DNA of 64,000 nucleotides. Source: Malacoraja senta (lineage: Eukaryota). Made by a program: the position numbers and the translations under genes. This document shows positions 5,375 through 61,744 of the stretch, piece after piece. The stretch spans positions 1-64,000 of the forward strand of contig JAXLNO010002227.1 in NCBI GenBank assembly GCA_038087875.1. The letters run 5' to 3'. A model generated the notes under the pieces. It had not been told where the DNA came from. It did not search any database and worked only from the letters and a program-made list of their open reading frames with translations. Each line of letters opens with the position of its first letter. The first letter of the stretch is position 1.

Positions 5375-5464
5375 CTCCAATTTTCAGAGCCACTGCAGCT
5401 CAAATGGATTCAGCCTCATCAGTGCTAGCTCAGAACAGGACAACCCTTCAACAAGTGGCTGCAG
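5375..5464 (+). CDS. PER2: PER2 exon ([30 protein letters not shown])
   Basis: acag| ... |gtaggt; conserved [12 protein letters not shown]; phase 2/2. Confidence 0.88.
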
Positions 5465-7987: not shown

Positions 7988-8027
<40 letters not shown>

Positions 8028-17000: not shown

Positions 17001-20000
17001 CTCCTAGAAATGTTTGGTATCGCAGCTTAATGCGAGGCTGCATCTACGCAGACATCAGAAATGCAAGTTGAAAAAAAATTGTGCGTTTATTTTTATTGCA
17101 TATAAATCTCGTTAGAGTAATTTTTATTCTGTATCCCAGATTTTATGGGTCTCTATTTTAGTTTAGTTAGGATATACGGTCCTTAAATTTGTAATTTCAA
17201 TTCTCCAAACTGCAGTATCGTGGGGCTTTGTATTCATTTCGTATTTGTTCAGTAGGAATTACATTTATTTCTTTATTGATCTTTAATGATTATTAATTAA
17301 TGCTTATAATCAGACAATAACATGTAGGTGATGTTGTCCATCGATAAGCCTGAAATTGTTGCTCTTAAAACAAGTAGAAAGAGCCAATTAAATGAATATA
17401 GCTTTGTAGACAAATAAATATTTGCTCTTTGTAAAACTCTTAAGAATTACAAAGATGTCTGATCGTGAGTCATAGTGACTCTCTAAAGGATTTGCATTTG
17501 TATAGCGCCTTTTGGTGATCTCCAGATATTCCGAATTACTTTGAAATCAATTAAATTATTTTTAACGTGATGTATTGCAGGAAAAGTGTATTGTAGGAGA
17601 AGATAGCAGTTAGCTTTGCACAAAAGTGGCAGTGAGAAACATATGGAAATAATCTAGTTTAGTGATGTTGACTGAGCCAAAAAATGGCTGGGCACCTGTG
17701 TTATTCTTTGAAAAATGCAAGGAATCGTTTGCCAAGAGACATAGTTTTGCCTTTCCATGGGCATTTAAATTGAGATGGGCTCAATTTAAATGCCCATGGG
17801 AAGGTGTCTTTTGACTGTGAAGCTCTCCCTTACTAATGTATGGAAATGTTGTTTTAGATTACGTTAAAGGGTGGCACTTGGTTTTGAGAACATTTGGCTT
17901 TGAGACTCTAATGATACCACCGAAACAAGTTTGTCAGCTCCCATATAGAAAATGGAGCACTGGAGTTAATAATATTTTCATTTACTCTTTGAATGCAGTT
18001 GAAAATACTGCTTTAACAATTTTCTGCCATCATTAGTTCATTCAGCAGTTGGCCTAGTACATCCTGAATTCACTATCTAGTTTTTTTGTGACTCAAAAGC
18101 AGAGTCTGCTCTTGAGCAGTCATTAATTTTGGGAGGAAATCATTAACCTTTAGTCCCTTGTCTCTTTCTTTCAGATGGTGGTTTGGAAAGCTGGTAAAGA
18201 TCCCCACACAGGAAGAATTCGAGGACAGACAGAATTCAACAAAATAAAGAGTGAATCAAAGTGCAGACACAGAACTGGTAATAGACTTAATTATTTTGCA
18301 GTCATTATCTAGGCATATACGTAAATGATTTAAACAAATTCTGAGTGAAAAGCACCATGAGTCCAAGAATGACATTTGCCATTACAGCTGTGCTTGTTTC
18401 ATTCACTCTTATTCTGTGAATATGGACCTGATGTAGTCATTTGGATTTACATAGAAAACATCAATGTAAGGAACAATGTAAACATGTTGCTATTTGCCTT
18501 TAAATACTTTGGGACTACAATTTTACTTGAATATGTATACTTTTTCAATATTCAGTTCCTACCATTTTTGAGAACCAGATAAGAATAAGACGAAGGGAGT
18601 CTGGCTATAATACATCTAGCTTCATTTTGACTGAAGTATTTGAAAAGCCAATTTAAATAAATATGACCTGTTTTTTTTTTTAAATTAAGGGAAAACTAAC
18701 AAAAGACTTGATCTCTCCTTACTTCAGAATTTTACGCATTGTTCTCATTGTAGAAGGGCATATATTTTGCAGGAACACAAAAAGAGACAAGTAAACAGAC
18801 TAAAGATGTTAAAGCCAGCCCATCCAAGGGTACTGGAACAAGTAGTGCTGGAAAGAACATGCTCGTGGATGAACCAAGATGTGAGGAACATGCTGGATAT
18901 TGCTATCAGCAAATCAATTGTCTGGATAGTGTAATAAGGTGAGTGGCATTCTGGACCTGAACAAATGTATTTACCAAAACTACAAGGCTTTATTTGTTGA
19001 CCTGGATTTTATCATCAGTTGTGAAGTGACAACTCTCATGAATGGCCTTTAAGAAAGCAGCCACAGAGATACTTGGATCTCTGTGAAGTACATTTCATCT
19101 TTCCTAACATAGGTTGCTAACTGACACCAGCCAGCCCCAGTGACCTGGATCGATCCTGACCTTGGGTACCGTCTGCATGGAGTTTGGACGTTCTGCCTGA
19201 CACGACATGGGTTCTCTCCGGGTGCTCCGGTTTCCTCCCACATTCCAAAGACGTGCGAGTTTGCAGATTAATTGGCTTCTGTAAATTCCCCCCCCTTGTG
19301 TGCAGGATAGAACGAGGGTATGAGTGATCACTGGTCAGTTTGGACTCGGTGGCCCGAAGGGCCTGTTGCCGTGCTGCATCTTAAAACTAAAACCAGCTCC
19401 AGTAGAAATCTTGGGCTCAGCAATAGTAATGGCAACCAGCAGGCTGAGTACCCAGAGCTCAAACAAGAAAGTTTAAAATAAAACACAAGTTTTAATCAGC
19501 TTAAATATTGTAGCATGCGACGTAAAAGTTGAAACATACACATATTGAGCCTCCTTTGAATCATGGTAGTTGACTTTTCGGCAAATGTATCAATCCTTTT
19601 GCTCATGTGAAGGTGGCAGGTATATAGATTTGGATATCCTCTGCTATTTCAGTGTAAAAAATGCACGGCATCTTTTACATCCAAGGTTTATTGCTTTACC
19701 TGAAACAAGTCACGTTCGACAGTGTGGCACACTTTCAATGCCACACTGAAGCATCAACTATGTTCAGAAGTTAGCCTGATGGCCTGCTGAGTCGGGCGAG
19801 ACGGCACCATTGAGCCACATTGACCCTTTTGACTTGTAAGATCAGAAAATATTTGCTTCATCACTGTTTAAAACGCACATACACACTTTTGTCTTGTGCC
19901 CTTTTTAGATACACCAGAATACTGCTTTAAAGTTGAGAGAAAAATGATTAAATAATATGTCGAATGAGTCTGTTTCTCTCTTTTCTGTTACCTCGTTGAT

Positions 20001-23000
20001 TTTTGTTACTTTGGTATTTTTGCAGATATCTGGATAGCTACAATATTCCGTGGACTACAAAACGGAAGTGTGGTTCTTCATCGCCATCGGATGACGACAA
20101 ACGAAAAGTTGATATCGTGAATGATTGTAAAGGTATTTACCAAGTCTGAAATTGAGGTGTTTAGTTTTGTTTCAAATTACCTACCAAGCTACAGAATGTA
20201 CGGAACGTCTGACTTGATTCAAAGATTTAATCTGTATGGTGCCATGAGGTTTCTGAGGCTTATTAGCCTATCTTTATTGCTTTAAAAACAAACCCAGATG
20301 CTAGAAACAAAATGTTGGAGGTCACAGAATGTCACGCAGCATCTCTGAAGAAAGAAACAATTATTATTCCAGTTCTGATCAAGATCTGAAAAATTAACTC
20401 TGTTTCTATCTCCAAGAATGCTGCCTGATTTATTAAATATTTCCATTATTTAGTTTTGTATATATATATATATTTTTTTGCTCAACATATCTTAGTCATT
20501 TAGTAACCACTGAGTGTTTATCGAAAGCCAAATTCGGTATGTTTCACAAAGTCATCCATCGGAGATAAAGTATAAATGCGAGTATTTGACCTGCGGAATT
20601 GCTTTCCTTGTAGCTCCATTAAAGTCTGCAAAGAAGATGCCTTCTGGAGCAGTTGTTGGCACACTTCTGGCACCACGCGCCTTGCGAAGGAAGGCAGCGA
20701 GCGTCACCAGTCGAGGAAGTTACAGCAGCACCATTGTTCATGTGGGAGACAAGAAACCGCAGGCAGATGCAGGTACTGAAATTCACGTTCTAAAAGATCT
20801 CTCAAGAGGAGGTGCAAGTTGGTTAATACACGCACTGCAAGCATTTCTGTGAAGCTTCAATGTCCTGACCTGAGCATGGAAGGAGAAGAATATTGATTTT
20901 TAGTGACCAATAAATGCGATATTTAATAATTTCACAGCACCCACAACTTTTTTTTTTAGCACACTTGACGTAGCAAAATCATTTTGCAGTATCTCACAGG
21001 ATTAAAATGTCATTAATTGTAGGCCACATAAAGAGATGGTAGGGCCATAGCTCAGAAGCTTTGTCTAAAAGGTAGAGTTTGTGAAGGACACAGAGTGCTG
21101 GAGTAACTCGGCAGGTCAGGCAGACATGCTGAGTTACTCCAGCACTTTGTGTCCTTTTGTGTATAAACCAGCATTTGCAGCTCCTTGTTTCTAGATGTTG
21201 TGAACATGTTAAGTTAGGAAACTGGAATGGAGGTGGAGAGTTTTAGTTCCATGGGTTAGGGCCTTGGCAGCTGAACACATGGTCTTCCAACATGGAGCAA
21301 TGAAGCACCAAAATTAGAGGAGCATGGATTACTATGGAAAATATGCCAGAGGAGACTACAGAGGTGGAAAAGACTGTGTGGAAGAACTAAAGTTTTAAAT
21401 TTGAACTATTAGCGAGCCAGGTTCCAATGTAGATTATCAGGCACCGAGATGGTGAATGAACAGAACTTACTGTGATTTTAGCCCTGTGATGGCTATTTAG
21501 TGTGATTTATGGTTAAAAAAATGTAAGTTCTTGAGGCATAAGTAATTTGTATTTCCCAATTGAGGTGCCCTTCTGAAGAAACAATATTAGCTCCACAGGC
21601 TATACCACAATGTTTCTGAATGCTACTTATGTGTGTACACGCAACACGTGTATTTGTTTCCCCACTCCTATGCCCAGATGTGTGGTTGCTAATTCCAGCA
21701 ATGCTACCACGGTCAAACTCATGCCTGACCAACTGGAGCACTTGCTCATTAGGGGAGTTATTATGCCATTATAGTTGATGCACTTGCCTTCATGCAGAAA
21801 AAACACCCTCTTACGCATACAATTTTAAACTTAAAATCTTGACAGAAATCCTATTGGAGGATGGACTTGGCATTGCAGATCCAGCAGAGAACATGACATC
21901 TGCTACGCTGGTCACCACAGCATCTTCTGTGAACCTGGAAAAGGAAGCATTCAAGAAACTCGGTCTCACCAAAGAAGTTCTAGCTGCTCATACACAGAAA
22001 GAAGAGCAGATATTTTTGAGCAAGTTCAAGGAGTTGAGTAAACTAAAACCATTTGGAGCTACTTGCAAATCCTCTTTGCAATATCGGCACAAAGAATATT
22101 CAAGGGATCGTGGTAAGATTTTACAAATAAGGGTTTTTAAATTAATTTTACTTGTAAGCATACAAAATGTGTTGCTGTATATTATCTACGAGAAGAGGCA
22201 ATTGAGGATCAATGTACCATGTTTCATTTCGGGCTAAATTTAGCATATTATCCTATGGTTTTTGTTTTTGTTTTGTTAAATTCTCATGTAGCCTTGCCTG
22301 TTATAGTCATTCCAGTTGCCTTCATGGAACTTTTATAAACTGCTTCTTGGACGATCTGCCAATGTCTTGTCTCTGATTGCTAAAATAAGTTTGAATTGTG
22401 GAGAATCTTTGTTTGAGCTTCAATTTTAAACAGTTAATTTCAGGAGTTGTGGGACCAATATCTATGTCACTCCTTTCATCAACCTTTCAATATAAAAATG
22501 TCCAGAATAAGGTTAGAAGCAAATACTTACAAGTCCCATTTGTTTCCTTTGTAGCCTCTCGAGGATTTGCGTGGAACCGTGGAGAGCCCGGGCACAAAAA
22601 AAGCGGGAAGAATAGGAAGCCTAAAACGAAGCGCATCAAGCAGCAAGGATCATCTGATGGCGCGGCAAGCGGAAGAACCAATCATAGACTCCACCCTTGG
22701 CCCGCACCAATTACTGCACTCATACCTACCTACCAGCTGCCGATGTTTCCAACCCCTGGAGGCATGCCTTTTGCAGCTGACCCATCTCTGGCCAACTTTG
22801 CTGCTCAGGCTCTTCATTACAATCCTCAGACTCCACCATTTTCCGCGCCACTCGTATCCCCGCTGGTGGCAGTTGTGTTGCCCAATTACATCATGTCTCC
22901 GGGACCCGAGACGGCGCACCAGCCAATTTTTGCAAGTAAGCCGCCATTCCCTTCGCAACCAAACTTTTTACCTGCATGGAATTTATTCAAGGCTCCGCCA

Positions 23001-26000
23001 GCCTTTGCACCGCAGTATCGTGACCAGCCTGCACCAGGGAGTCAAGGGCAACAAGGCCACACTTCCCCTCCAAATTTCCATTCTAGGTCCATTTCACCTT
23101 TGCAGCTGAACCTTCTGGATGTGGGGCCCGGATCTACGAAAGCAATTGGACTTGTAGCTGGAAATGAATTAATGGCGGACCGAAGAGTAATGACAAGCAA
23201 CATGAACGGTACAAATGTGGGCACCATTGCAAAGGACGAAGCAGATCTTGTAAGTGGCGTACAAATTATAAACAATAATTGGATTAAATTTCTGAGAAAA
23301 ATAAATCGAGAAAATTGAGGACAGTGTAAATAGAATAAAGTCTCTGAGCTTTCCTTCTGGGCCCTCCCTGCATCTGATACATTTGTGCATGAATTGTGCC
23401 TGGCTGCCACTTCTACTAGGGGGATTTTGATGTGCGCCTGCTCACCCATAGATGTGAGCGCTTGTTTAGAAGAAGATATTCATCGTACTCCTGAGGTCTT
23501 CAGCATTAGCCAAGGGGACCACTCTGAGCTGGTCCCACTCCCAATCTGTGAGGTCCTGTTCTGGAAACAGATTTGAACTTGCCCACTCCTTCATTGTAAC
23601 CCTTTCATTCCCTCCCCTACCTGTTCCCGATCCAATTCACTCCCTCAATTCTAGCACCCATCCCCCATTGCCATCTTCCAACGACTCTACATTCAACCAC
23701 TAATCTATAGACCTGACACTTCCATGCCACTCACACCAACTGATCCCCTGGCTGTCAGCAATCGACTGCAATGGCGCATGATGCCAATTGCCCAGTCTCT
23801 AAAGCTCTTTGTCCCAGAATAAAGTGGGGAGAAAACATTGTGTCTGGAAAAACTCTTAAATGGGACAAGGATTTAAAATTGACCCATTTAAAAAAAAATG
23901 TCATCCATACTTCTCCATTATAATTTCCTGCGTTATTTTTAAATTGCATATGTTGCACCCTTTTTAATTCACTTCCTCCAACCCCCCCCTTCCCCGTACT
24001 TTGTTTTTTCATGGTGAGAAGATGAATAAGCAACAATGTTTAGACATTTGCCATTAACTTGTGGTCCATCGTATTGTCTCCTAGACAGTATTGTTAGCCT
24101 ACATTATCCTGACGATACACAAGACTGATACCCCATTACTCAGTAACGCCATGTGCTGTATACCATGTCCAAAATGTCTGTAGCAATTCTTTTATTTTTT
24201 TAATTCACTATGCAGCAATTTGACATTTTAATTAATAATATATTGCCTGTCTGGTGTGAACATATTGTATGGTTTTTTTTTGCTCTCTAAAGAATGAATC
24301 CCCTACTGAAGCCCAGAACAGTGACTCTCACTCCACTTCTACTGACATGCTGAAGCTGTTATTGCAGTCAGACGTCGGCTCTGCCGGCTCGGGGAGTATG
24401 GAATCGACAAGGTCCGGCTCCTCGGGCTCTCCGTCCAATGGTTGTGGAATGTCCGGAACTGACACAGGTAACTTTGTCCTTTTGTCTTAACCTAACCCAT
24501 AATGTAACACTAACAACTGTCTGAATTATCAGTGGATCTATTCTTTTTTTTTAAACAAAAGATCCATGTCGCCCATGGTTTTCTTTGCTTAAGAGCTTGT
24601 GTAAGTTAACTGATGGGTTGCTTTTGCTTGGGGTTGGGTGACAAAAATAAATAAACAGCACATTAGATCAGACCATCTATTGCTCTGGAAGGAGTTAACC
24701 TGTTTAATAGAATACATCTCCGACCATGGCAACACTCTGGCAATGGTTGGAGATGGCAAAGCATTTTCCAAGGCTCGTATGGTCCTTGAAAGTCCTGGAA
24801 TTTGAATCTGTTTTCAAGGCCTTAAGTCCTTGGATTTATCATGGGTCCTTGAAAGTCATTGAAATAGTGGAGACTTTGAAGCAGGCAGGGACAGTACAGG
24901 TTTGCAGGGACTCGTTGAAAAACAAAGTTTTCCATTATGGTTTCAGATTGAACAACCAAGAGATGAGTAAATGGACCATCAGTGCTCTATTGAAGTACGA
25001 ATATAGATAGGTTAACCATCTTGTGTGTAATTATTATGTAGTTTAGTGTCGTTCTCTGCAACCAGGACTAATGGATTGACTGATCACCTTCTCAGATTTC
25101 CCTGAAAATCAGTGTCTGTACATCAGAGCACACAAGTAACACAACAGAAAACAAGGTCTCAACTCCAAATTCCAATAGGCATTTGGCAATAATTCGAGCT
25201 ATATTCATGACTTCGAAGGAACTTTGAATTGAAAGTTGATTTTTCTGCTGTGCTTTTTGTACCAGAGGTGTGCAAAACATGATTTTCAATCAAATTTGAG
25301 ATGGAGACCAACCAACCTTCTTTCTTACTTTTATTTGGTACAGAATCAAATCATCCAATACGAAGCAATTTATATAAAAGTCTCCAATAAACCATCAATG
25401 TTTGCTGGATTTTGGTCCTTGAAGATTGGATTTTTGGACCTTAAGTCCTTAAAGTCCTCGAATTTAAAGCTGTTCCAAGTGTACAAACCCTGATATTCAC
25501 CAAAGACATGTGGGCTTGTACGTTAACTGGCCTTTGTAAACTTGCAGCTAATATGTAGGGAGTGGATGGGGAAGTGGAATACCGTGCAACTAGTATGTAC
25601 GGGTGATCAATGCTTGGCATGGACTCGGGCCAAAGGGCCTGTGAACATGCTGTATCTCCAAAATAAACCAAACCAGAAGGACTGCAACAGTTCCAGAAGG
25701 TGGCTCAAGTGGAGAGCCAAATAAAGTGAAAGGTGGAGAGCCTAATTCTCCAGATCAATTTGGGGGAGGCAATAGATGCTTATCTTGCCTTTGTTTTTCT
25801 TTGTTTGTCATGATTAGGTAGTAGCTGCTTGAGCAGCAGCAAATATTTTGGAAGCAACGACTCTGACAATGAAAAAATAGACGCGAGAACCATGATGACC
25901 TATCAACTACCATTCAGGTAAGTGCCCAAAATCCCAATTGTGTTGACTCCAACTTCAAAGGCTCTCCATATTGTTCTGTCTTAAGGCGAAAGAGTACCTA

Positions 26001-29000
26001 GGGAGAGGTTAAAGATCAATAAGGTCATGTACGCATCGAACCAAAGAAATGGGTGAGGTGTTCAATGAATATTTGCTGTTTGGCTTCACAATGTAGAAAG
26101 ACATAGAATCAGAATCACACTTTATTCGCCAAGTATGTTTTGCAACATACGAGGAATTTCATTGGCCAGGTCAGTCATACACTTAAAAGCAACAGATCAC
26201 TCAAAAACACATTTTAACATGAACATCCACCACAGTGACTCCTACACATTCCTAATTGGCGAAATACAAGTCCCTTCCCTTAGTTCTTCCTCGGTCTTGG
26301 GCCTCGAGCCCCCGTTGACGGGACGATCTTGACTCCCGTAGCCGGCGGCGTTCGGGCCCTCTGCGTCGAGGCGATCAGCTCCTGCATTGGGGGGGGTGTC
26401 AGCTCCCCCGCGCTGGGCGATCGAACTTCGCGTCGGGGTTGGTCGAACCTTCTGTGACGTTGGAGCTCCCGACCAGCCTCTCCCGACTGCAAGCTCTTGA
26501 TGGTAAAGTCTGCGGTGGGAGCGATCCCAGGCAAGGGATCAGCTCCGATGTTAAGTCCGCGCCCTGCGGTGGGGCTCACAGTCCGAGGAGGCTTCCAGCT
26601 CCAGCGATGGAAGGCCACAGAACACGCCGGAGAATGTGATCTGAAAATTAATCACATCTCGGGCAAGGTAGGAACTTGAAAAAAAAAATCACCCGATCCC
26701 CTCCCCCCTCCCCCACATAAAACAAACCGAAGAACATTCAAACAAACTTTAAACACTAAAAAATAACAAAAAGAATGGAAAAACGAACAGACTGCCGGCA
26801 GGGCAGCCATCGCCCTGGCGCCCCTGGTGGAAAGATGCTAGAGAGGTTAGTAATGATCTCTTCGAGAGATCTGCATTACAGAAGAGAAGGTGCCTGTGGT
26901 GTTAATACATACAAAAGAAGAAAAATCCCCGGGACCAGACCAAGTGTATCCTAGGACATGGTGGGAAGCAATTGGTAGCCACTGGCAGAAATATTTATAT
27001 CATTTGTATGGAGAGAGTTTTCAGTTATCGCTTGCTTCTGGGCTAGTCCCACATGGTTAGCTCACTTTCTATTCCTGTTGACTCCACAGAAATAAAAGTA
27101 AAGCCCATACAATAATAGGCAGGCAGACAATCAATGATGCCATCTGACCCGCCAAGGCCCATGTTCAACAAAGTCGTGGCTGCAGAAAGGAAAGAAGAAC
27201 AAGAAGTTTAGTTTAATGCAGGGAAAACCTACAGGGAGAATACTCAAAAGTATTCATTTTGAGGGTATGAGAATTGGAATTGCACTGACCAGAAAGAACG
27301 TATTTATAGTATGGCCTTGGTTCATGTTTTCTGGGCAGTGCTTCGAATACAATAAAACTTTGTTAATACAGCACAGTTGGAACTTGGTGCTAGATTGAGA
27401 TTTTTCTTTTGGATATCACTCTCATTATTACCTCAAAACACTTCACTTGTTTTGGATGTCACATAGTGGCATAATTTTTCCAGTGAACCCTGTGAGTTTT
27501 AAAAGGGAATTGGGAATCTGAAAGTAAAGAGAGCATGGGAGTCTGGGCCTGGTGAGCAATGATGTTGGTGAATCCAGGAATTAGATGGCAGGTTATCAGA
27601 GTTGCACTTCAATAGAATTTTTAATTCAATCTCCACTTTTCCCCTTGTGGTGAAGGTGCTTTTCCTTTCTGTAGTACGTCTCCTCGATTGCTAGCAGTTC
27701 TCTTATTACATTAACTTATTACACACTGGCATGTGGTTTAGCTGGTAGGTGGCTGGTAGTTTGTTCAACCATGGAGGACATCCAATCTAAGTCGAGTCTA
27801 GTTTTCATCCCACATGCACACTCAAGGCCAAGTTCACCAAATGACAATTAGTGGATGTATCTCTGAGCTATTTTGAAAGTTCTACTTCATTGCCCTCGAG
27901 GACCTCTCCATGTTTGTGGTGCTTCAGCCTTTGCCCTGGGTGAGATCAACTAATTATTTTAAGGTTCAAGGTTTGCGTCAGTAACACTATTCTGTCGGGG
28001 GACCTTACGGGATTTCTAATCCTGGCAGTGATTAAATAATTTAATCTCCGAGTCCAATTTTGTCCGAAGAGTAAAAGATGCCCAATTGTATTTACAAGGT
28101 AATAATCTAATTGCAAGACCTGTAATCTGATCTTTGGGTTTCAGATAATACAAAGATCCAGCATAACATTAAATAATTCATAGCCCTCTGAAATCTAAAG
28201 ACAAGAGAATCATTCTGCACTATCTATTTCATAATAAATTATATGTACTGTAGCTGTATGTCTGATTTCTGCACTACTTTTCAGCCAACATTAACCATTA
28301 AAGTTAATAACCCAGTCTTTGGCCCATGAAATAGAAACACTGCTGCATAAAAGGTCAATTTTATCTGGAATTTGATCCTGAGACCTTGTATCTCTGTGCC
28401 ATCAGTGGGCTTCCTGTTTCCAACTCTTTACGTTACTCGAGTAGCAGTCCATCTGCTACTGAAACGCTCATACAAATTAACTTTTCCTATGTCATCAGGA
28501 CAGCATTTCCCTCGACTCTTTTTAAACTGGGCTGCTCAAAGCTCTGGTGCCCATCTTTTAGCTTGCCGCTAGTTCTAATTACCCATCACCCTCAACCTTT
28601 TGACTTAAACTGATTCCTAACCCTAAGCAACAATCCTGAATTTAAGATGTGCTTAAGTGTGATTCCAGTATTTGAACATTTAATGTGTTCGTCTGCTTCC
28701 AATTCTCTTCAGGTTTATTCTTCACTTTATCTGGAGCATTAACTGATTGTTTTAAATGGGTTACACGGTCATTAAAATGAAAAATGCATTAACCACCATG
28801 CATGGATTGTGCAGTGAAATTCTAGTTCTGAGTGACTTTGCCTTACCTTGATACCAATCATTTTGTAGAGAGATGGCTGAGATTCATATGTCAAGCACAT
28901 GTATTGCTGATGTTTTTTTTATAATATTTATTATCTCCCAGTGCAGTATAATCAGCATGCCTTTCTTTCTTACAAATCAGGGACATTGTAACAGTTTTGA

Positions 29001-32000
29001 AGGAGGACAGGGTAAAGCTGAAAGTGTTGCAGAGAAACCAACCCAAATTCACAGAGAAACAAAGAAAAGAAATTGCTGAGGTCTTTAAAACGGGTGCAGC
29101 ACAAAAAACCATTGGCATCATGGTAAGTCCATTTTTAACTTCCTGAACTTGGCAGGAGAAATGAATTATATTTTCATGATAAAATCTGCACCCATTTTTA
29201 TCACATGCATTCCATATTACCTGATAAAGCTGCTGCTTGTATGGCTCAACAATATATTGCAAATCCTATTTCTTGAACATCATTGACTGCACCATGGGAA
29301 TTTTTAATAGCTCTGCTACAAACCAGCCTTTGTCTGCCCTGTGTTGGACTGCCAACAATGGGGTTAAATTAAAGGCCATGTTTTGCAATTGAGTATTGTT
29401 GTTTCCAAACTTATTTTATGTTTAAGATAGACATAAAATGCTGGAGTAACTCCGTGGGACTGGCAGCATCTGTGGAGAGAAGGAAAGGGGGACGTTTTGG
29501 GTCGAGACCCTTCTTCAGAACCCCCTTTTTAGCTTTCTCAACTGTATGAACTCTGTTTGACAATTTGAGTTGTGATCTAATCGCTCAATTTATATTATTG
29601 TCCCAAGTTTTAATATTATCCAAGTTTTAATATAATACTTCATTTGCACTCAGACGTGGATTAAATTTCAGAAATGAAAAGCTTCTTAAGCAGGTGGTTC
29701 TACAGTTTTTATAGGAGCACATACTCTGAAACTGAGGCAATTTCCCATAATAATAATGGCAGGATTTAATGTATATCCCCTACCTCCTTCCAAATAAATT
29801 CCAAATGAAGTAAAATGCATCAATCGTAGAAACTAATTATTTGAGTGATATAAAGCATGAAAAATGTTTTATATATTTGAACATTTCCAAACTTTTGGAA
29901 AAGTGGTGCAGTGTGAATGAATGCTGGAAATCTGAGCAAAAAGAGAAATTTGTGGAAACTCAACTTAAGAGTTTAGTTTAGAGATGCACCGTGGAAACAG
30001 GCCCTTTGTCCCACCGAGTCCGTGCCGACCAATGATCACCCATACACTAGATCTATCCTACACACATAGGGACAATTTTGGAGAAGCCAATTAACCTACA
30101 AACCAGCACGTCCTTGGAATGTGCAAAAAAAAATCACACGGTCGCAGGTAGAACTTACAAACTTCTTACAGATAGCACCCGATGTCGGGATCGAACCTGA
30201 GTCCCTGGCGCTGTAAGGCAGCAGTTCTGCCGTTGCGCCATTGTGCTGCCCCTTGTGGAGAAAGAAATTAGTGCTTTATGTTTCAGGTCAATGTTGTTTT
30301 ATCAAGAATTTAGGTCTTGATGCTCCACAAACACAGATCGATTGTGCGTAGTCTCTCCTCTCTGCCTTAAGCTTCACACCTCTCCCCTTCTGCACTTTAA
30401 GGTCTAATAGCTCTCTTCTTAAAAGTTGTGATGAATGATTCATAGCCTAAAATATTAGTTCTAGATGCTGCCTAAATCGCGTTGCACCAACATTTTAATT
30501 TACTCCCACACATTTGTAAAACACACAAATTGTCTTGTTCCACACAAATTGTAGAACACTCACAAATACGAAGATAGACACAAAATGCTGGAGTAACTCA
30601 GCGGGTTAGGCAGCATCTCTGGAGAGAAGGAATGGGTGACATTACGGGTTGAGACCCTCCTTACAAACACGACATTTGTGTTTGGGTCTGCTTATGTGAC
30701 ACCCATGAAGCAGTAAAAATCGCCCACAGTATGAATATTTCAACTGAAGTGTCTGAACATAAATTTGAACCAAACCAGCGTGCAACATTTACCATTGTGA
30801 TGGGGGGGGGGGGGGGGGTTCATCCATAAAGAAAATACAACAAGCCTGCTCTGCAAGAGCAATAAAACTGACAGCACTCTGATCTGTTTTGTATTTAAAT
30901 ATCCTCAAGCTGTTATTTTAAGAATCCGAGACTTTGCAGTGCTCTTTGTGAATCACCCATTAAAAGCAAGTTGGGATCAATTCCCAACTTCTTGTTTGAA
31001 ATGCCATAAAATTTAAAGTGTGCAGAATTTATTATAGCATTCTATATTTATTATATAATTTATTATAGCATATAGGTATGCAAGTAAAACTAAACACCTT
31101 TTTATACCAAGACAAATTTGACCTGTCCCCTTGTGACACATCACTGAAGAAAACTAAATGGTAATAATAAATGTGGACTAGGAATTTTGTCATGAGTGGA
31201 CTGGGCTCTCAATTTAATGTAATTGTTTATTAACAAAATAAAAATTCGAAAAATTGGAAAACTTGTATGAAACTGGAAAATTACTTTCATTTCAACAATT
31301 ACAAATAAAATATAAACTCGGAAATAATCAATATTTTAAATATTTTCAAATATGCGACTATTTGAAAAAAATACAAAAGATAATAACCCAGTAGATGTAT
31401 TGGACGAGGCAATGCAGATAAAAGCGGAATCAGCAAACTTAATATCATATTTGTATAATATTATCTTAAATGTACAAATACCACCTACGGAGGGTATCAG
31501 AAGAGACTGGGAACAAGAGTTAGCTATTAAAATTTCAAAGGAAAGTTGGAATGAATACATATTAAACGTGCATAAATGCTCGATTAATGTAAGACACACT
31601 TTAATACAATTTAAAATTTTACATAGATTATATTATTCAAAAACTAAAATTCATAAAATTTTCCCAAATGTATCATCTATTTGTGATAAATGTCAATCCC
31701 AAGAAGCTACTATAGCACACTCATTCGTTTTCTGTACAAAAATTCAAAAATTTTGGAATGAAATTTTTGAAATCTTTACAAAGTTATTTAAAACAAGACT
31801 GATACCCAAAGCAGAATGGATTATCTTCGGTATAACGGAAGATGGTCCAGAACTAAATGTGTTTCAAAAGAAACTAATGGACTATGGGTTAATAATTGGA
31901 AAAAAGCTAATTCTAAAATTTTGGAAGAAGGCTCCAATACCAACTATAAATATGTGGATTTCAAATATGTTTGAAACATTACACCTAGAAGAGATAAGAC

Positions 32001-33467
32001 TCCTCCTAGCAGGTAAACCAGATCACTTCCACCTGACGTGGTCTGCATTTATAGAATTATCAGGTAAGGGGGGATGATAGTTGAAGAGTTGGTATGTCCC
32101 ATTTACGTAATGCTCATAAAAATATCTGTTTCTCTCTTTTTCCTCTTTCTCTCTCTCTCTTTCTTTCCTAGGGTCTATTTCTTAACTCTTTTTCTTTTGT
32201 TTTTAATTTTGCTCTTATAGGGTCTTCGTCCTTTTTTGTTGTCACATTTCCTACACTTTCACTTTTTCCTTCACTTTCTTCTTTCTTTCAATCTTTTCCT
32301 TTTCTACTGTAAAAAATAAATGGAGTACATTAATTGTAAGAAGATATAAATGATGAGTACTAATGTATGTGGTTGTAATGTAATGTACTTCTAATAAATA
32401 AAAATTAAAAAAAAATAATAATAATTGGAAAATGCATTTAGTGCACATATATATAATTGGGGAGTAGGGAGATGATCAAATAAAGCTGTGATAACTTCCA
32501 ATAAGCATTGGACTTTACAAAGCAACCATTATAATTGTCTGAAGAAGGGTCTTGACCCTTAACGTCACCCATTCCTTCTCTCCAGAGATGCTGCCTGACC
32601 TGCGGAGTTACTCCAGCATTTTGTGTCTACCTTAGATTTAAACCAGCATCTGCAGTTCTCTCCTACACATAATTGTCTGCCTGTTGAATCTTTTCATTCA
32701 CAGCTTTCCTGCAGCATTTAGTTCAGTATTGTACAATTGGTAAAATAAATAGCCGCCGGGTCTGCAACTTTTTGGCAGACAAGAAAATTAATTATTAAGG
32801 TTAGACTCCGGTCAGCATCCTGGATAAGCGATGTTTCGGGTCGGATCGGGACTCTTTTTCAGACTGAAATGTCACCTATCCACGTTCTCTAGGGGCGCTG
32901 CCTGACCCACTGAGTAACTCCAGTATGTTCTGTCATTCCTTGGTAAACCAGCAGCTGCAGTTCTTTGTTTCCACAAATCAAATGTTAACATGGACAATTG
33001 GCTTTCATGTTTTAACTGAATATAGACTTAGAATCAGCATGTTTTATTGTGATTCCTTTTGAGGCTAATGTTGGCTATAATTAAAAAAAATGACAACTAA
33101 TTTTGGGATTGTTCCTTATGACTCATAAAAATTAGAATGGTAAGAATAAAATGGAAATAATATATGACACTGCTTGTACTCTTAATGATTTTGTTTTTAT
33201 GGAAGGTGTGGAATTTGTCGTGTATATATTTGATTGTAATTCTTCTTAATTTAGGATAGAATCTTCTCTGAGAAAAATGCATCACAGAACATTTTGTCAG
33301 CATTGGATATGGAAATCCATAATCTGGAGTTTAGTGGACTGAATGAGCCAGGACACGATGTTGGCTTTCAGGCCACGAACATTGCAAATGAAGGGCAAAA
33401 CCCTTCAGAAAATGCAGACCCCAACCTGGCAGTAGAAACAAACACATTTGGAAACTCTGCAAGTTGA
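5375..33467 (+). CDS. PER2: Period circadian protein homolog 2, multi-exon gene span (21 coding exons in window, equivalent to mammalian exons 3-23; 5'-partial)
   Basis: Manually spliced exons total 3472 nt (1+3471), with all intron phases compatible, all GT-AG and no internal stop. PER motifs include [101 protein letters not shown] and MMTYQLP. PER2-type CK1BD-B/NLS and adjacency to HES6 support PER2. Confidence 0.93.
6567..6700. repeat. Penelope-related palindromic repeat arm with intact minimal hammerhead core (6665-6692, - strand)
   Basis: rc: CTGAAGA-A-GGGTCTCGACCC-GAAA-CGTC. Confidence 0.6.
7126..7325. mobile_element. PIF/Harbinger-like MITE
   Basis: TIRs AGGGCCTGTCC…GGACAGGCCCT flanked by TTA target-site duplication (7123-7125, 7326-7328). 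Confidence 0.8.
7664..7818 (+). CDS. PER2: PER2 exon ([16 protein letters not shown]...[13 protein letters not shown])
   Basis: gcag| ... |gtaggc; conserved PER N-terminal helix. Confidence 0.93.
7991..8023. repeat. (GA)n microsatellite
   Basis: Direct reading. Confidence 0.95.
8479..8600 (+). CDS. PER2: PER2 exon ([11 protein letters not shown]...SEYTSKNA)
   Basis: gcag| ... |gtaagt; ANEEYY motif. Confidence 0.93.
8810..9200 (-). mobile_element. Ancient Deu-domain SINE (SacSINE1-like) relic
   Basis: Degenerate L2-type tail and Deu-like segment; similar relics at ~17485-17960 and ~19620-19830. Confidence 0.45.
9360..9560. repeat. Palindromic (inverted-arm) Penelope-related repeat
   Basis: …GCTGGAGTAACTCAGCGGG…/…CCCGCTGAGTTACTCCAGC… arms; the family also occurs at ~21087, 29428, 30575, 32538, 40175, 43977, 45145, 45313, 47595, 48052, 48545, 49640, 59970, 60720, 61387. 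Confidence 0.8.
9704..9905 (+). CDS. PER2: PER2 exon, PAS-A ([21 protein letters not shown]...[10 protein letters not shown])
   Basis: acag| ... |gtgagt; PAS-A homology. Confidence 0.94.
11344..11890 (-). mobile_element. CR1 LINE 3' fragment
   Basis: ORF 11552..11905: [28 protein letters not shown]…[10 protein letters not shown] plus CR1 3'UTR. Confidence 0.9.
12388..12442. repeat. 28-bp tandem duplication
   Basis: GCCTCAGCAGTCGAAGATGTGGTTTCT twice. Confidence 0.9.
12721..12772 (+). CDS. PER2: PER2 exon ([18 protein letters not shown])
   Basis: ttcag| ... |gtgagt; EKSFFCRI motif. Confidence 0.93.
14350..14492 (+). CDS. PER2: PER2 exon ([20 protein letters not shown]...[15 protein letters not shown])
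   Basis: acag| ... |gtgaga; AERVHSGYE motif. Confidence 0.94.
14768..14957. repeat. Palindromic Penelope-related repeat (long hairpin)
   Basis: ~65-bp inverted arms. Confidence 0.8.
15221..15299 (+). CDS. PER2: PER2 exon, PAS-B start ([27 protein letters not shown])
   Basis: atcag| ... |gtatgt. Confidence 0.94.
15643..15749 (+). CDS. PER2: PER2 exon, PAS-B ([14 protein letters not shown]...PLMLSIHKK)
   Basis: acag| ... |gtaagt. Confidence 0.95.
15924..16077 (+). CDS. PER2: PER2 exon, PAS-B/PAC ([13 protein letters not shown]...[19 protein letters not shown])
   Basis: ttcag| ... |gtaagt; dimer-interface Trp (NPWSRK) intact. Confidence 0.95.
16584..16692 (+). CDS. PER2: PER2 exon (GPLNEDVF...[11 protein letters not shown])
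   Basis: gtag| ... |gtaaaa. Confidence 0.94.
16796..16927 (+). CDS. PER2: PER2 exon with beta-TrCP phosphodegron ([13 protein letters not shown]...HKP)
   Basis: ttag| ... |gtaagt; SSGYGS at 16814-16831. Confidence 0.93.
17750..17804. repeat. 25-bp inverted repeat with 5-nt loop
   Basis: CCTTTCCATGGGCATTTAAATTGAG-ATGGG-CTCAATTTAAATGCCCATGGGAAGG. Confidence 0.95.
18175..18277 (+). CDS. PER2: PER2 exon ([21 protein letters not shown]...RHRT), divergent
   Basis: Strong polypyrimidine tract + cag|, |gtaata; phase 0/1 bridges the neighbouring exons; weak similarity to the PER 'TFQQICKDVH..GQQ.F' exon. Confidence 0.8.
18773..18938 (+). CDS. PER2: PER2 exon, CK1-binding domain A (…[15 protein letters not shown])
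   Basis: ttgcag| ... |gtgagt; phase 1/2. Confidence 0.9.
19138..19392 (+). mobile_element. HE1-like SINE (5'-truncated)
   Basis: Family consensus body and tail. Confidence 0.8.
20026..20132 (+). CDS. PER2: PER2 exon ([27 protein letters not shown]...)
   Basis: gcag| ... |gtattt; TKRKC motif. Confidence 0.92.
20614..20772 (+). CDS. PER2: PER2 exon with FASP region (…[29 protein letters not shown])
   Basis: gtag| ... |gtactg; [15 protein letters not shown] motif. Confidence 0.93.
21846..22112 (+). CDS. PER2: PER2 exon, CK1-binding domain B ([27 protein letters not shown])
   Basis: acag| ... |gtaaga; ORF 21839..22237. Confidence 0.95.
22555..23249 (+). CDS. PER2: PER2 large exon: NLS, proline-rich region, SPLQLNLL
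   Basis: gtag| ... |gtaagt; ORF 22398..23318. Confidence 0.93.
24293..24467 (+). CDS. PER2: PER2 exon ([25 protein letters not shown]...SG-rich)
   Basis: aaag| ... |gtaact; LKLLL = LxxLL. Confidence 0.92.
25818..25917 (+). CDS. PER2: PER2 exon, shortened CRY-binding-domain exon ([34 protein letters not shown])
   Basis: ttag| ... |gtaagt; SKYFGS and MMTYQLP anchors; 100 nt, phase 1/2. Confidence 0.92.
26105..26830 (-). mobile_element. Non-autonomous GC-rich element with (GATTCT)n tail, inserted in a CR1 ORF2 relic (~26040-27000)
   Basis: Shares its 5' head motif with the 2611-3465 element; flanks encode EMGEVFNEY… and [12 protein letters not shown]. Confidence 0.65.
28981..29122 (+). CDS. 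PER2: PER2 exon ([47 protein letters not shown])
   Basis: atcag| ... |gtaagt; VLKEDR.KL and QP.FTE.Q..E motifs; phase 2/0. Confidence 0.93.
29969..30253 (-). mobile_element. HE1-like SINE
   Basis: Family consensus. Confidence 0.8.
31262..32422 (+). mobile_element. 5'-truncated L1/Tx1-clade LINE (ORF2 C-terminus with Cys-rich zf-RVT region, 3'UTR, A-rich tail)
   Basis: ORF 31352..32077 ([11 protein letters not shown]…CDKC…HSFVFC…FW); AATAAA + A-tail; candidate TSD AATTGGAAAA at 31252-31261 and 32423-32432. Confidence 0.88.
33255..33467 (+). CDS. PER2: PER2 terminal coding exon ([31 protein letters not shown]...GNSAS*)
   Basis: ttag| acceptor, phase 0, 70 open codons to TGA, followed by an AT-rich UTR-like sequence; positional similarity to the PER2 tail (ECVYCEN...). 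Confidence 0.8.
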   Translation, partial: DRIFSEKNASQNILSALDMEIHNLEFSGLNEPGHDVGFQATNIANEGQNPSENADPNLAVETNTFGNSAS

Positions 33468-34573
33468 GGTCTTTATCATGTACAAACGGACACATGCTTT
33501 CTTGGTATGAATGCACAGAGCTCTTTGGGAGTTGATGAAAATTTCATCTCACCTTAAGTCGAAGAAATTACAGTTTGAAGATTTTTTGGAAAAAAACCGT
33601 TGTTATTTAATAGCATAAATTGTGTTGCGTCAGGTTGAACTACTTATGACTATCTACAGTTCTTTTAATGTACATGTTCATGGAATCCAGTATTATTATA
33701 TCTGATATTCTTGGAATCTTTCAAAGTATCAATGTCTGTTGTAAATGAATCGGCATTTTTCAATAATCTAGCCATAAAATTAATTTTATAGTCACTTGAT
33801 GCTTGTTCATTTCAGCTTCTAGATAAATATCCATGTGGAGGTTTGTAATCCAATTTACAAAGTTTCCACTGCCAGTATAGTTTTGTTGTCACATTCATTA
33901 GGACAGACAATTTAACAGAATGTTCCACTGTGTGGAGATGTACACAAGAGATTTTTTTTTTTAATAGGTTATAATAATAATTATAAGTTCAAACAAAATG
34001 CATGCAGATTGCTGGACCTAGCATTTCAGCTATTCACTCTAACTCATTCTAAATTGTGGACACCAATTTGAATATGTACTAAGATTGGAACTTTAACATT
34101 TTTGGTGTATTCCAATCAGATCCAAAGTCCAGAAATGTAAACACTGATGAATGGAAGCTAATCTTTGTGATTTTGGATGAAAGCAATAAACAGAGAGCAT
34201 TAGAAATATAAAAATAAACCAACAAAGCTGTTTAGAGATCATTTGTCCCGATTTTAGAGTTATCATAAGGTCCAGTTCATTAAATCCTCTACATTAAAGC
34301 TATTTTTTAATGAAAGGCAGTGATGCAATTGCTGGGTGTCAAAGGCAAAGTAACAGATCTTGATTATGCACAGTGTCTCTTGACAAAACATACAATGTTC
34401 TCAACTTCTCAGTATGTCTTTTTTTAAAGTTGTTTCTCACAAACCGCCCTATTTGTCAGTTCTGTGGCTCCTCTGTTTTTGTAATTGTTAAGACTGTAGA
34501 AAATGCAATTTCGTTCAAACCAAGCTGTTTGAATGACGATAAAAGGCATTCTATTCATAAAGTGTAAATTACA

Positions 34574-55611: not shown

Positions 55612-56069
55612 TTACCACGGCCTCCAGACCGACTTGGAGTACATTGCAGGGGATGTGTTCTCTGTCCGACAGCTGTCTACCACTTTATCTTGCAGCAAGG
55701 GTGCCGGTGCAGCAGTGGACGGGTCCGCGTCGTCCAGATCGGAGCAGGCATCATCGCTGGAGGCAGAGGATACAGGAGACAGTGCCGGGGAGCAGAGCTG
55801 TTCTCTACCTCCGGGGGACGCCAATAACAGGCACATATCGTCAGGCCCAGACCATATACTGGAGCTACTCTCAGCCATCAACTCGCCCAGTAAATCCTGA
55901 AAGTGGTCTTCGCTCAGTGGCATGGACTCCAGGAGGTGGTTCAGTAAATCGGCGGCTACGGCAGAATCGATCCCCGGACAGTTTGAAACGAAAGTGTGGA
56001 CCTCGTGCATGCACTGGATGTAGCCGGCTGCAAACCTCTCATTCGCTTCCTCGTTAAACCTATCCTGTT
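55612..56069 (-). CDS. HES6: HES6 exon 4 (Orange domain, WRPW)
   Basis: gcag|AA CAG GAT…; ORF 55612..56079 ending WRPW*. Confidence 0.96.
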
Positions 56070-56688
56070 CTGCCAACAAGGAGAGAAGGAAGAGTTTTTT
56101 TCCCTTAAAAGAAACAGCTTCCTATCGTAACAATTGCCATTAAAATATATTGTTCGCATTCTGCAAAAAAAAAAGCTTATGCAATACATGTATATATTTT
56201 GCAATAGATTCCCAACTCCCTGCAATTTCCACTCCCCTGCCTACTCACCAACATTTCTGTTGCAAAGTATGTTTTGGACGCGTTTCACCGTCATCTCCAG
56301 CACCTCTGCATTCTCCATTTTCGACTGCAGCTGAGAATATTTAGCACATTTTAGATTTTTATTTTTTTAAATCACGTACTGAAATCTGAAGGGATTTTTT
56401 CCCCCCCATCAGTACAGCTTAAAAAAAAAACTCACTTCCGTATCCGCCAATATCAGTCTCAGCTCTTGCAAGCTTTCGTTAATGCGGGCTCGCCTCTTCT
56501 TCTCGATCAATGGCTTGCGAGTCTGCAGTTAGCAAAAGAAACGCCCCGGGTTAGAGTGAATTTTTTTTTTGTCTCGTGCATAGCCCCCCGATTAAAAGTT
56601 GCCCTTTTAAATGTACCTTGCGATCTTCTTTGACTGCATAAAAGTCTCCTTCATCCCTGACAGATCCCGGTTTGCAGGCTGGAGCCAT
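55612..56688 (-). CDS. HES6: Transcription cofactor HES-6 (bHLH-Orange-WRPW), 4 exons, 232 aa
   Basis: Spliced protein MAPACKPG…EDRK|TRKPLIEKKRRARINESLQELRLILADTE|LQSKMENAEVLEMTVKRVQ…|EQDRFNEEANERFAAGYIQCMHEVHTFVS…LLNHLLESMPL…SVWRPW; short bHLH loop typical of HES6. Confidence 0.96.
56249..56330 (-). CDS. HES6: HES6 exon 3 (helix 2)
   Basis: tcag|CTG CAG TCG…GTT G|gtgagt. Confidence 0.95.
56436..56522 (-). CDS. HES6: HES6 exon 2 (basic region/helix 1)
   Basis: gcag|ACT CGC AAG…GAA|gtgagt. Confidence 0.95.
56617..56688 (-). CDS. HES6: HES6 exon 1 coding part
   Basis: ATG GCT CCA…CGC AAG|gtacat. Confidence 0.92.
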
Positions 56689-61300: not shown

Positions 61301-61744
61301 TTACTGTAGGATTAGACAGGGGCGCTGCTCCCCCTTCCTCGCCCCCACCCAAAATGATCTGTAAAATGTAAATATAAGCTTTACGTGTAGGAAGGAACTG
61401 CAGATGCTGGTTTACACCGAAGATAGACACGAAATGCTGGAGTAACTCAGCGGGACAGGCAGCATCATCTAGCATTTTCTTTTTATATCTTCAATAGAAA
61501 CTTTAAATACACTACACCTAAACACAATCGCTACTGGAGGGACTAGAGGATTCGGGGCATGTTTTACGAGGATGGACAAACAGGGAGTAGTAATTCACAA
61601 AGTCGGGACAAAATGCATTCTAGACTCTTAGAAACAAGGGAAAAAAGAGCCCAGACTGAGTATTATTTCCCTATTCACTTTGGTTATAGGGTTGGTTAAG
61701 GGGTTTAGTGTGGTAACTTTGCTTAAACTTTGCTTAAACTTTGC

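What the first reader, a model, noticed from the sequence alone, without database searches (positions are those of the whole stretch)
33255..33272. PER2-CRY zinc-finger cysteines replaced (CxxC to RxxS)
The last exon begins D-R-I-F-S-E-K, aligning position-for-position with mammalian E-C-V-Y-C-E-N. Those two cysteines contribute ligands to the intermolecular, redox-sensitive zinc site with CRY. No cysteine occurs anywhere in this terminal exon.
Basis: partly seen in the sequence, partly recalled or inferred. Interest (0 to 1): 0.75.

Follow-up and report, generated by a model that had tools for sequence, protein, structure and literature searches.

The report
Skate PER2 lacks zinc-clasp cysteines
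The clock gene PER2 of this skate lacks both cysteines that in mouse PER2 share a zinc ion with cryptochrome; the first is missing in every cartilaginous fish checked, so this "strictly conserved" vertebrate site is not universal.

Summary
Window 33255-33272 (+) reads GAT AGA ATC TTC TCT GAG, which is D-R-I-F-S-E. It opens the last coding exon (33255-33467) of an intact PER2 orthologue.

- **Alignment.** A gapless alignment to the crystallised mouse PER2 chain (4CT0_B), made with a skate transcript about 95% identical in nucleotides, puts Arg on Cys1210 and Ser on Cys1213. The exon has no cysteine.
- **Splicing.** The junction 29122->33255 is carried by two transcript contigs from related skates. 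No other PER-tail or CxxC exon exists in the window. The acceptor is conserved to the base in another skate, an electric ray and two sharks.
- **Distribution.** The loss is not private to this animal. Cys1 is absent in all 19 cartilaginous-fish PER2 compared. Cys2 survives in some species and was lost at least four times by different one-base changes of a TGT codon. Of 335 other vertebrate PER1/2/3 proteins, 311 keep CxxC.
- **Paralogues.** I found no cartilaginous-fish PER1 or PER3. A published table gives the elephant shark Per1/2/3 as 0/1/0.
- **Likely consequence (inferred).** Skate PER2 probably holds CRY by its conserved central clamp without the zinc/redox clasp, like a natural version of the mouse Per2 C1210A/C1213A knock-in.
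- **Not tested.** The CRY zinc ligands could not be checked.

An earlier follow-up in this scan (s1-195545) reached the same conclusion on another piece of this genome.

The parts
33255..33272 (+). Six codons GAT AGA ATC TTC TCT GAG (D R I F S E). Arg 33258-33260 stands where mouse PER2 has Cys1210. Ser 33267-33269 stands where it has Cys1213.
33255..33467 (+). Last coding exon of PER2: 70 codons without cysteine plus TGA. Conserved islands are [12 protein letters not shown] and the C-terminal TFGNSAS.
33246..33254 (+). Splice acceptor ttaatttag of the last exon, conserved to the base in Rhinoraja, Narcine, Heptranchias and Rhincodon.
29123..33254 (+). Last intron, 4132 bp, GT..AG. It holds highly repeated DNA and a retroelement ORF (31340-32074, zf-RVT).
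28981..29122 (+). Penultimate exon (exon 21): the central CRY clamp [30 protein letters not shown] is kept. In this species it has a 9-bp deletion of the PW(F) motif behind 29083 and Asp-to-Gly at 29114-29116 (the mouse Asp1206 equivalent).
5375..33467 (+). PER2 gene, coding exons 2-22. All 20 introns are GT-AG and the frame is open for 1153 codons. The first coding exon lies upstream of the window.
33468..33794 (+). 3' untranslated region, as far as the related skates' transcript contigs cover it.
55615..56121 (-). Exon of a HES6-like gene (Hairy_orange domain). As I recall it, HES6 is the neighbour of PER2 in other vertebrates; I did not check that here.

Best explanation
This is the genuine last exon of the skate's PER2 orthologue. 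The two cysteines that in mouse PER2 (Cys1210, Cys1213) join CRY Cys414/His473 around a zinc ion have been replaced by Arg and Ser.

The replacement is an old evolutionary loss, not a private mutation or an annotation problem. The first cysteine was lost before the cartilaginous-fish lineages compared here diverged, or at least in all of them. Once the pair was broken, the second cysteine decayed independently in several lineages: to Trp in galeomorph sharks, Gly in whiptail stingrays, Phe in Narcine, and Ser (then Pro) in skates.

Shown: the sequence, the splicing in relatives, the orthology, the distribution of the loss, and the intact and constrained gene.

Inferred: skate PER2 still binds cryptochrome through the conserved central clamp (the VLKED Asp1167 equivalent and the LKVL alpha-3 stretch) that wraps the CRY C-terminal helix. 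It does so without the zinc 'clasp' and hence without zinc- or redox-dependent tightening. By analogy with mouse Per2 C1210A/C1213A knock-ins, I would expect a somewhat weaker or more dynamic complex and a shorter PER half-life, not a broken clock.
For: Sequence and frame.

Splice junction 29122->33255 in two relatives' transcript contigs.

No alternative tail exon: 13 PER tails hit only 33255-33464, and other CxxC strings lie in retroelement or random frames.

Orthology: the cartilaginous-fish clade (SH-aLRT 100) is sister to bony-vertebrate PER2 (100), apart from PER1 and PER3. A HES6-like neighbour lies downstream.

Position mapping onto the crystal chain 4CT0_B.

Distribution: Cys1 is absent in all 19 cartilaginous-fish PER2. 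Cys2 is kept in Callorhinchus, Heptranchias, Pristiophorus, Heterodontus, Pristis and Mobula, and replaced elsewhere.

Codons at Cys2: TGT (Heptranchias), TGG (Rhincodon), TTT (Narcine), TCT (window, Rhinoraja), CCT (other skate). Each is one step from its neighbour state.

Gene under constraint: dN/dS is 0.34 overall and 0.09 in the PAS region.

Clamp residues kept: read against Nangle 2014 (PMC4157330).

Mild phenotype of the mouse CACA knock-in: about 25 min shorter period, shorter PER half-life, and PER-CRY association not severely impaired (PMC11645128).
Against: - No RNA of the same species was laid; X1 and X2 proved to be DNA.
- The CRY side (the Cys414/His473 equivalents in skates) could not be examined, so 'no zinc clasp' rests on the PER side alone.
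- Binding was not measured.
- In transfected cells and with recombinant protein, the mouse CxxC mutants lose much CRY binding, so retained binding in skates is an inference.
- In this species the arm leading to the clasp is further eroded: the PW(F) deletion, Asp1206-equivalent to Gly, and 6 of 29 lineage-specific changes in 47 codons. Skates also lack the N-terminal Trp helix. CRY coupling could therefore be weaker than assumed.
Confidence: 0.78

Rival explanations
1. Wrong exon: the real transcript ends in a different terminal exon that carries CxxC, and this exon is unused or a minor form.
For: No RNA of the same species could be laid. One Mobula isoform model (P0238) has another short 3' end.
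Against: Tails of 13 PER proteins match only 33255-33464 in the whole window. Two relatives' transcript contigs join 29122 to 33255. Gene models of 18 other cartilaginous fishes end in the orthologous exon. The acceptor is conserved to the base. The Mobula alternative end has no CxxC either.
Confidence: 0.03
2. Assembly or sequencing error at the two codons.
For: None found.
Against: Contigs of two DNA runs of the same organism show no difference in the exon, though they may be the assembled sample. The X9 transcript contig of a related skate has the same 18 bases. Rhinoraja has Lys/Ser and a third skate Arg/Pro at the same codons.
Confidence: 0.01
3. CRY-uncoupled or decaying PER2: the loss of the clasp is part of a dismantling of the whole CRY-binding domain in skates, so that PER2 no longer binds CRY stably and acts otherwise (for instance through CK1 or CLOCK:BMAL1 contacts).
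For: Skates lack the Trp helix of the CBD. This species also lost PW(F) and the Asp1206 equivalent, with a significant local excess of changes in exon 21 (p about 0.001). The last exon evolves fast, with dN/dS 0.4-0.9 and up to 1.9 between skates on few changes.
Against: The central clamp that Nangle 2014 found necessary for binding (the alpha-3 stretch 1171-1174 and Asp1167) is intact and highly conserved. CBD dN/dS is 0.44, below 1. The frame is intact and the PAS region strongly constrained. In mouse, single-stretch alanine mutants of the CBD did not abolish binding.
Confidence: 0.12
4. Compensated metal or contact site: other side chains take over the clasp. Candidates are the conserved Cys at motif position 3 in sharks, or Asp/Glu/His or the Arg in skates, so a zinc site or a salt bridge still closes the end of the interface.
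For: All nine sharks and Callorhinchus keep a Cys at position 3 of the motif (xxCC or xxCW), which suggests constraint there. Skates and Pristis/Narcine have a basic residue at Cys1.
Against: Skates, Narcine and the whiptail stingrays have no thiol anywhere near: the whole last exon of the window is Cys-free. Four different residues replace Cys2 (W, G, F, S/P), which looks like drift and not a designed substitute.
Confidence: 0.07

Closest known systems
Mouse PER2 CRY-binding domain with the intermolecular CCCH zinc site (PDB 4CT0 with CRY1, 4U8H with CRY2; Schmalen 2014, Nangle 2014)
   Same: Same gene by tree. Same domain (Period_C). Same central clamp sequence, aligned without gaps to the crystal chains. 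Same place of the motif at the start of the last exon.
   Different: Arg and Ser stand in place of Cys1210 and Cys1213. This species also lacks the HPW motif and the Asp1206 equivalent, and skates lack the N-terminal Trp helix.
Per2 C1210A/C1213A and Per1 C1201A/C1204A knock-in mice (PNAS Nexus 2024, PMC11645128)
   Same: Both zinc-ligand cysteines of PER are replaced while the rest of the protein is kept.
   Different: The mouse case is engineered in an animal that keeps a second PER with the clasp. The skate case is natural, ancient, and apparently in the only PER gene. The mouse phenotype is about 25 min shorter period, lower robustness and shorter PER half-life. The skate phenotype is unknown.
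Rodent PER3 (Grammomys surdaster, P0230)
   Same: A vertebrate PER paralogue whose tail lacks the CxxC.
   Different: PER3 is a paralogue beside two clasp-bearing PERs (PER1 and PER2). Other mammalian, amphibian and fish PER3 keep CxxC.
Reindeer-specific PER2 substitution at the CRY interface (as described in PMC11645128)
   Same: Natural variation in the PER2 face that contacts CRY, discussed as altering clock robustness.
   Different: It is a single substitution in the helix region of one species. It is not a loss of the metal ligands across a vertebrate class.

Membership tests
PERIOD family, PER2 orthologue | PAS-A/PAS-B region and Period_C domain | tested here: met
   The PAS-A exon 9704-9904 is 87% identical to Hemitrygon PER2, with 134 PER hits. 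Exon 21 hits Period_C at 1.8e-10. The relatives' full proteins carry PF08447, PF14598, PF21353, PF23170 and PF12114.
PERIOD family, PER2 orthologue | Groups with PER2 and not with PER1 or PER3 in a tree | tested here: met
   The cartilaginous-fish clade including the window (100) is sister to bony-vertebrate PER2 (joint branch 100). PER1 (100) and PER3 (100) are separate (quick IQ-TREE, SH-aLRT only, lamprey root).
PERIOD family, PER2 orthologue | Intact gene: open frame and canonical splice sites | tested here: met
   21 exons, all introns GT-AG, 1153 codons open to TGA. dN/dS against a related skate is 0.34. The first coding exon is outside the window.
PERIOD family, PER2 orthologue | HES6 as neighbour (the PER2-HES6 linkage is from my own memory, not checked here) | tested here: inconclusive
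   A Hairy_orange exon lies at 55615-56121 on the minus strand. The nearest named Atlas clusters are HES-6-like, at score 0.87, which the tool rates as a lead only.
PER-CRY intermolecular CCCH zinc clasp | Two cysteines (CxxC) in PER at the positions of mouse Cys1210 and Cys1213 | tested here: not met
   Arg and Ser stand at these positions, and the exon has no Cys.
PER-CRY intermolecular CCCH zinc clasp | Cys and His ligands in the partner cryptochrome (mouse CRY1 Cys414, His473) | not tested
PER-CRY intermolecular CCCH zinc clasp | Zinc present in the complex | not testable with these tools
   Needs metal analysis of a purified complex.
[quoted passage not shown] | Alpha-3 stretch 1171-1174 and Asp1167 (Nangle 2014) | tested here: met
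   The window has VLKED and LKVL where mouse has VLKED and LKLL.
[quoted passage not shown] | Asp1206 salt bridge to CRY2 Lys503 | tested here: not met
   The window has Gly (29114-29116). The two other skates and all other cartilaginous fishes except Callorhinchus, Heterodontus and Cetorhinus keep Asp.
PER2 CRY-binding domain (N-terminal module) | Trp helix (LQDPIWLLMA) that tucks beside the CRY secondary pocket | tested here: not met
   It is absent in the window and in both other skates, and present in other batoids, sharks and bony vertebrates.

The most novel reading that the evidence does not exclude
Cartilaginous fishes, which seem to have PER2 as their only Period gene, run their clock without the PER-CRY zinc clasp. 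In skates, and most of all in this species, three of the modules of the PER2-CRY interface have been shed: the Trp helix, the HPW/Asp1206 arm and the CxxC. PER-CRY coupling is thereby reduced to the bare central clamp or is largely lost. The cryptochrome zinc ligands would then be freed, relaxed or re-used. That would make skates a natural minimal PER-CRY system and would date the zinc/redox input to the clock as dispensable for 400 million years in one vertebrate class.
Probability: 0.2. Interest if true: 0.75.

Novelty: new variant of a known kind. Interest (0 to 1): 0.5.

Why it matters
[quoted passage not shown] That conservation underlies proposals that cellular zinc or redox state feeds into the clock.

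The PER side of the site is broken in every cartilaginous fish compared, and fully absent in skates, an electric ray and whiptail stingrays. These animals apparently have no second Period gene to supply it. So the clasp is not a universal requirement of the vertebrate oscillator, and nature offers graded series:

- CxxC in bony vertebrates;
- xxCC and xxCW in sharks;
- xxxC in sawfish and manta;
- none in skates.

This makes a concrete question testable. Does losing the PER ligands relax the CRY ligands, weaken PER-CRY affinity, or shorten PER half-life, as in the mouse knock-in?

I found no paper in the searched library that reports this. The scan itself reported it once before on another piece of this genome (s1-195545).

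Tried and rejected
1. The last exon alone against PDB sequences and Pfam gave no hit. The tail is too short and too variable. The mapping was made through the penultimate exon and through the full tail of the related skate protein instead.

2. My first frame for exon 21 was off by one and was corrected.

3. My first exon 10/11 boundaries gave stops in all frames. A direct alignment with the transcript fixed them to 15924-16077 and 16584-16692. There is no real frameshift.

4. Runs X1 and X2, hoped to be RNA, are genomic DNA, with contigs continuous across the exon-intron border. The same-species junction therefore stays unshown, and both the run-search and read-laying caps are spent.

5. The hunt for cartilaginous-fish PER1 and PER3 found none. 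It covered:
   - an exhaustive PAS-A search (with names);
   - C-terminal searches with PER2, PER1 and PER3 queries.

   The last two list only the best 120 of 1028 and 554 hits, so absence is supported but not proven.

6. Genomic DNA for Pristis, Heterodontus, Hemitrygon and Mobula could not be fetched: the isoform was not on record or the file was too large.

7. Cryptochrome ligands: no query sequence was available by reference, and I did not type one from memory.

8. A pseudogene reading was rejected: open frame, GT-AG introns, PAS dN/dS 0.09.
Full report
**What is at the coordinates.** After the acceptor ttaatttag, which ends at 33254, the + strand reads GAT AGA ATC TTC TCT GAG AAA, which is D R I F S E K. 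The frame runs for 70 codons to TGA at 33465-33467, and the peptide has no cysteine.

The exon before it, 28981-29122, ends ...KTIGIM and is followed by GTAAGT. It matches the Pfam Period_C model (1.8e-10). It also matches the three solved mouse PER2 CRY-binding-domain chains 4U8H_B, 4CT0_B and 6OF7_B (E about 1e-8).

**The gene.** A 4029-nt transcript contig of a related skate (L001, Logan assembly of SRR5172149, encoding P0147) aligns to the window in 21 blocks from 5371 to 33568, at 85-99% identity per block, mostly about 95%.
- With boundaries refined, exons 2-22 all have AG/GT borders and give an open frame of 1153 codons.
- The first coding exon is not in the window.
- Against L001, dN/dS is 0.34 for the whole coding sequence, 0.09 for the PAS region and 0.44 for the CRY-binding domain. 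The gene is therefore functional and not decaying.

**Orthology.** In a tree of 40 PER proteins, the window groups with the skate transcript and Rhinoraja inside a cartilaginous-fish clade (SH-aLRT 100). That clade is sister to bony-vertebrate PER2 (joint branch 100), apart from PER1 (100) and PER3 (100).

A Hairy_orange exon whose nearest named clusters are HES-6-like lies downstream on the minus strand. As I recall it, HES6 is the neighbour of PER2 in other vertebrates; this linkage was not checked here.

**Is this the exon that is used?**
- Transcripts. L001 joins 29122/29123 to 33254/33255. Run X9, from another related skate, holds one 2112-nt contig whose pieces 28979-29121 and 33254-33794 are adjacent. 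That is the same junction, given the shared G.
- No rival exon. The tails of 13 PER proteins, from lamprey to cat, hit only 33255-33464 in the 64 kb. The other C-x-x-C strings downstream of exon 21 lie in retroelement or random frames.
- Conserved acceptor. In genomic loci of Rhinoraja, Narcine, Heptranchias and Rhincodon, the last exon starts at the same base behind the same ttaatttag.
- Limit. The two runs that hold the window perfectly (X1, X2) are genomic DNA. They confirm the letters but say nothing on splicing, and they may be the assembled sample. Same-species RNA evidence is therefore missing.

**Mapping onto the zinc ligands.** The tail of the skate transcript protein aligns without gaps to chain B of 4CT0. 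The skate string ...tidimdrifpekn... lies over the mouse string ...AIDVTGCVYCESE.... The cat PER2 tail, TECVYCEN, aligns to the same chain.

By the offset of that chain, the two cysteines are Cys1210 and Cys1213. Nangle 2014 and the 2026 review name these as the PER2 ligands of the CCCH zinc site shared with CRY. In the window they are Arg (AGA) and Ser (TCT).

**How widespread is it?** I compared 18 other cartilaginous-fish PER2 with bony-vertebrate PER1 and PER2 and with lamprey.

| Group | Motif at the CxxC place | Cys1 | Position 3 | Cys2 |
|---|---|---|---|---|
| Bony-vertebrate PER2 | E-C-[VSI]-[CY]-C | Cys | Cys or Tyr | Cys |
| Bony-vertebrate PER1 | C-x-x-C | Cys | varies | Cys |
| Callorhinchus | A-P-F-C-C | Pro | Cys | Cys |
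| Heptranchias, Pristiophorus, Heterodontus | L-V-C-C | Leu | Cys | Cys |
| Six galeomorph sharks | L-[VA]-C-W | Leu | Cys | Trp |
| Pristis and two Mobula | [KN]-I-F-C | Lys/Asn | Phe | Cys |
| Hemitrygon, Hypanus | N-I-F-G | Asn | Phe | Gly |
| Narcine | K-I-F-F | Lys | Phe | Phe |
| Skates | [RK]-I-F-[SP] | Arg/Lys | Phe | Ser/Pro |

- Cys1 is absent in all 19 cartilaginous-fish PER2.
- PER1, PER2 and PER3 of bony vertebrates all carry CxxC, and cartilaginous-fish PER2 nests beside bony-vertebrate PER2. The absence is therefore a derived loss.
- Cys2 was lost at least four times. Its codons are TGT, TGG, TTT, TCT and CCT, each one step from the next. That is what drift after the loss of the partner cysteine would give.
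- The skate of run X9 has exactly the window's 18 bases: all 24 of its differences in that contig piece are listed, and none falls in 33255-33272.

The 24 exceptions are:
- nine lamprey entries, which have CxC;
- four wrongly anchored by my pattern;
- ten models: nine diverge right at this exon border and look like read-through into the intron, and one older Anolis PER1 model diverges earlier, just after the HP of the HPW motif;
- rodent PER3, which truly lacks it.

**Is PER2 the only Period gene here?** I found no PER1 or PER3 of a cartilaginous fish in any of the following:
- the exhaustive PAS-A search of 1.84 billion cluster representatives, whose long hits were named;
- the C-terminal searches with PER2, PER1 and PER3 queries.

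The supplementary table of a 2024 survey gives Callorhinchus Per1/Per2/Per3 as 0/1/0 (PMC11457068). The last two of my searches list only the best 120 hits, so this is well supported but not proven.

**How it most likely works.** The following is inferred, not shown.
- In mouse, the PER2 CBD wraps CRY in several modules. [quoted passage not shown] The zinc site is described as a stabilising 'molecular clasp' at the flexible end of the interface (PMC4157330).
- The window keeps VLKED and LKVL.
- Mice with both ligand cysteines of PER2 or PER1 changed to alanine keep PER-CRY association largely intact in vivo. They have a period about 25 min shorter, lower robustness and a shorter PER half-life (PMC11645128).
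- I therefore expect skate PER2 to bind CRY by the clamp alone, without zinc- or redox-dependent tightening.

**What argues for caution.**
- In transfected cells and with recombinant protein, the CxxC mutants lose much binding.
- This species has eroded the arm before the clasp further. It has a 9-bp deletion of the PW(F) motif, present as extra bases in X9 and absent in the same-organism DNA. It also has Gly for the Asp1206 equivalent.
- Exon 21 carries 6 of the 29 lineage-specific substitutions of the whole protein in its 47 codons (binomial p about 0.001).
- All three skates lack the N-terminal Trp helix.
- The last exon as a whole evolves fast (pairwise dN/dS 0.4-0.9).

A weaker or even lost CRY coupling is thus a live minority reading.

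**Known or new.** The gene, the domain and the zinc site are known. A natural PER2 without the ligands, across a vertebrate class, contradicts the published statement of strict conservation. I did not find it in the searched literature.

Within this scan, an earlier follow-up on another piece of the same genome reached the same conclusion (s1-195545). I reached mine from my own calls before reading it, and I tested its claims here.

**Verdict.** This is a new variant of a known kind, of moderate interest.

Noticed in passing
window 28981-29122 (exon 21), especially 29083/29084 and 29114-29116: This species alone has a 9-bp deletion that removes the PW(F) of the HPW motif, and a Gly where mouse PER2 has Asp1206 (the salt bridge to CRY2 Lys503). 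Six of its 29 lineage-specific amino-acid changes fall in these 47 codons (p about 0.001). None falls in the last exon.
   Followed up: partly
window 25818-25917 (exon 20): All three skates compared lack about 19 residues that include the LQDPIWLLMA tryptophan helix of the CRY-binding domain. Other batoids, sharks and bony vertebrates keep it.
   Followed up: partly
P0138-P0148, P0003 (shark and chimaera PER2 tails): All nine sharks and Callorhinchus keep a cysteine at the third position of the motif (xxCC or xxCW), while all batoids have Phe there. This cysteine may be under its own constraint.
   Followed up: no
P0096 and P0254-P0261 (lamprey PER): Lamprey PER has C-E-C, one residue shorter than the CxxC of jawed vertebrates.
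   Followed up: no
P0046, P0080, P0103, P0129, P0401, P0404, P0455, P0480, P0481: Several database models of bony-vertebrate PER proteins that seem to lack CxxC diverge exactly at this exon border. They look like read-through into the last intron, that is, annotation artefacts.
   Followed up: no
window 55615-56121 (- strand): An exon with a Hairy_orange domain whose nearest named clusters are HES-6-like. As I recall it, HES6 is the neighbour of PER2 in other vertebrates; not checked here.
   Followed up: partly
window 31340-32074 (+), 34885-37500 (-), 61727-62709 (+): Retroelement open frames (zf-RVT, RVT_1). The first sits inside the last PER2 intron, which also holds very highly repeated DNA (29404-32923 in the depth table).
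   Followed up: no
P0238 (Mobula hypostoma isoform X4): A predicted isoform with another short 3' end (...DITHLQNSSCSRF) in place of the usual last exon. It has no CxxC either.
   Followed up: no
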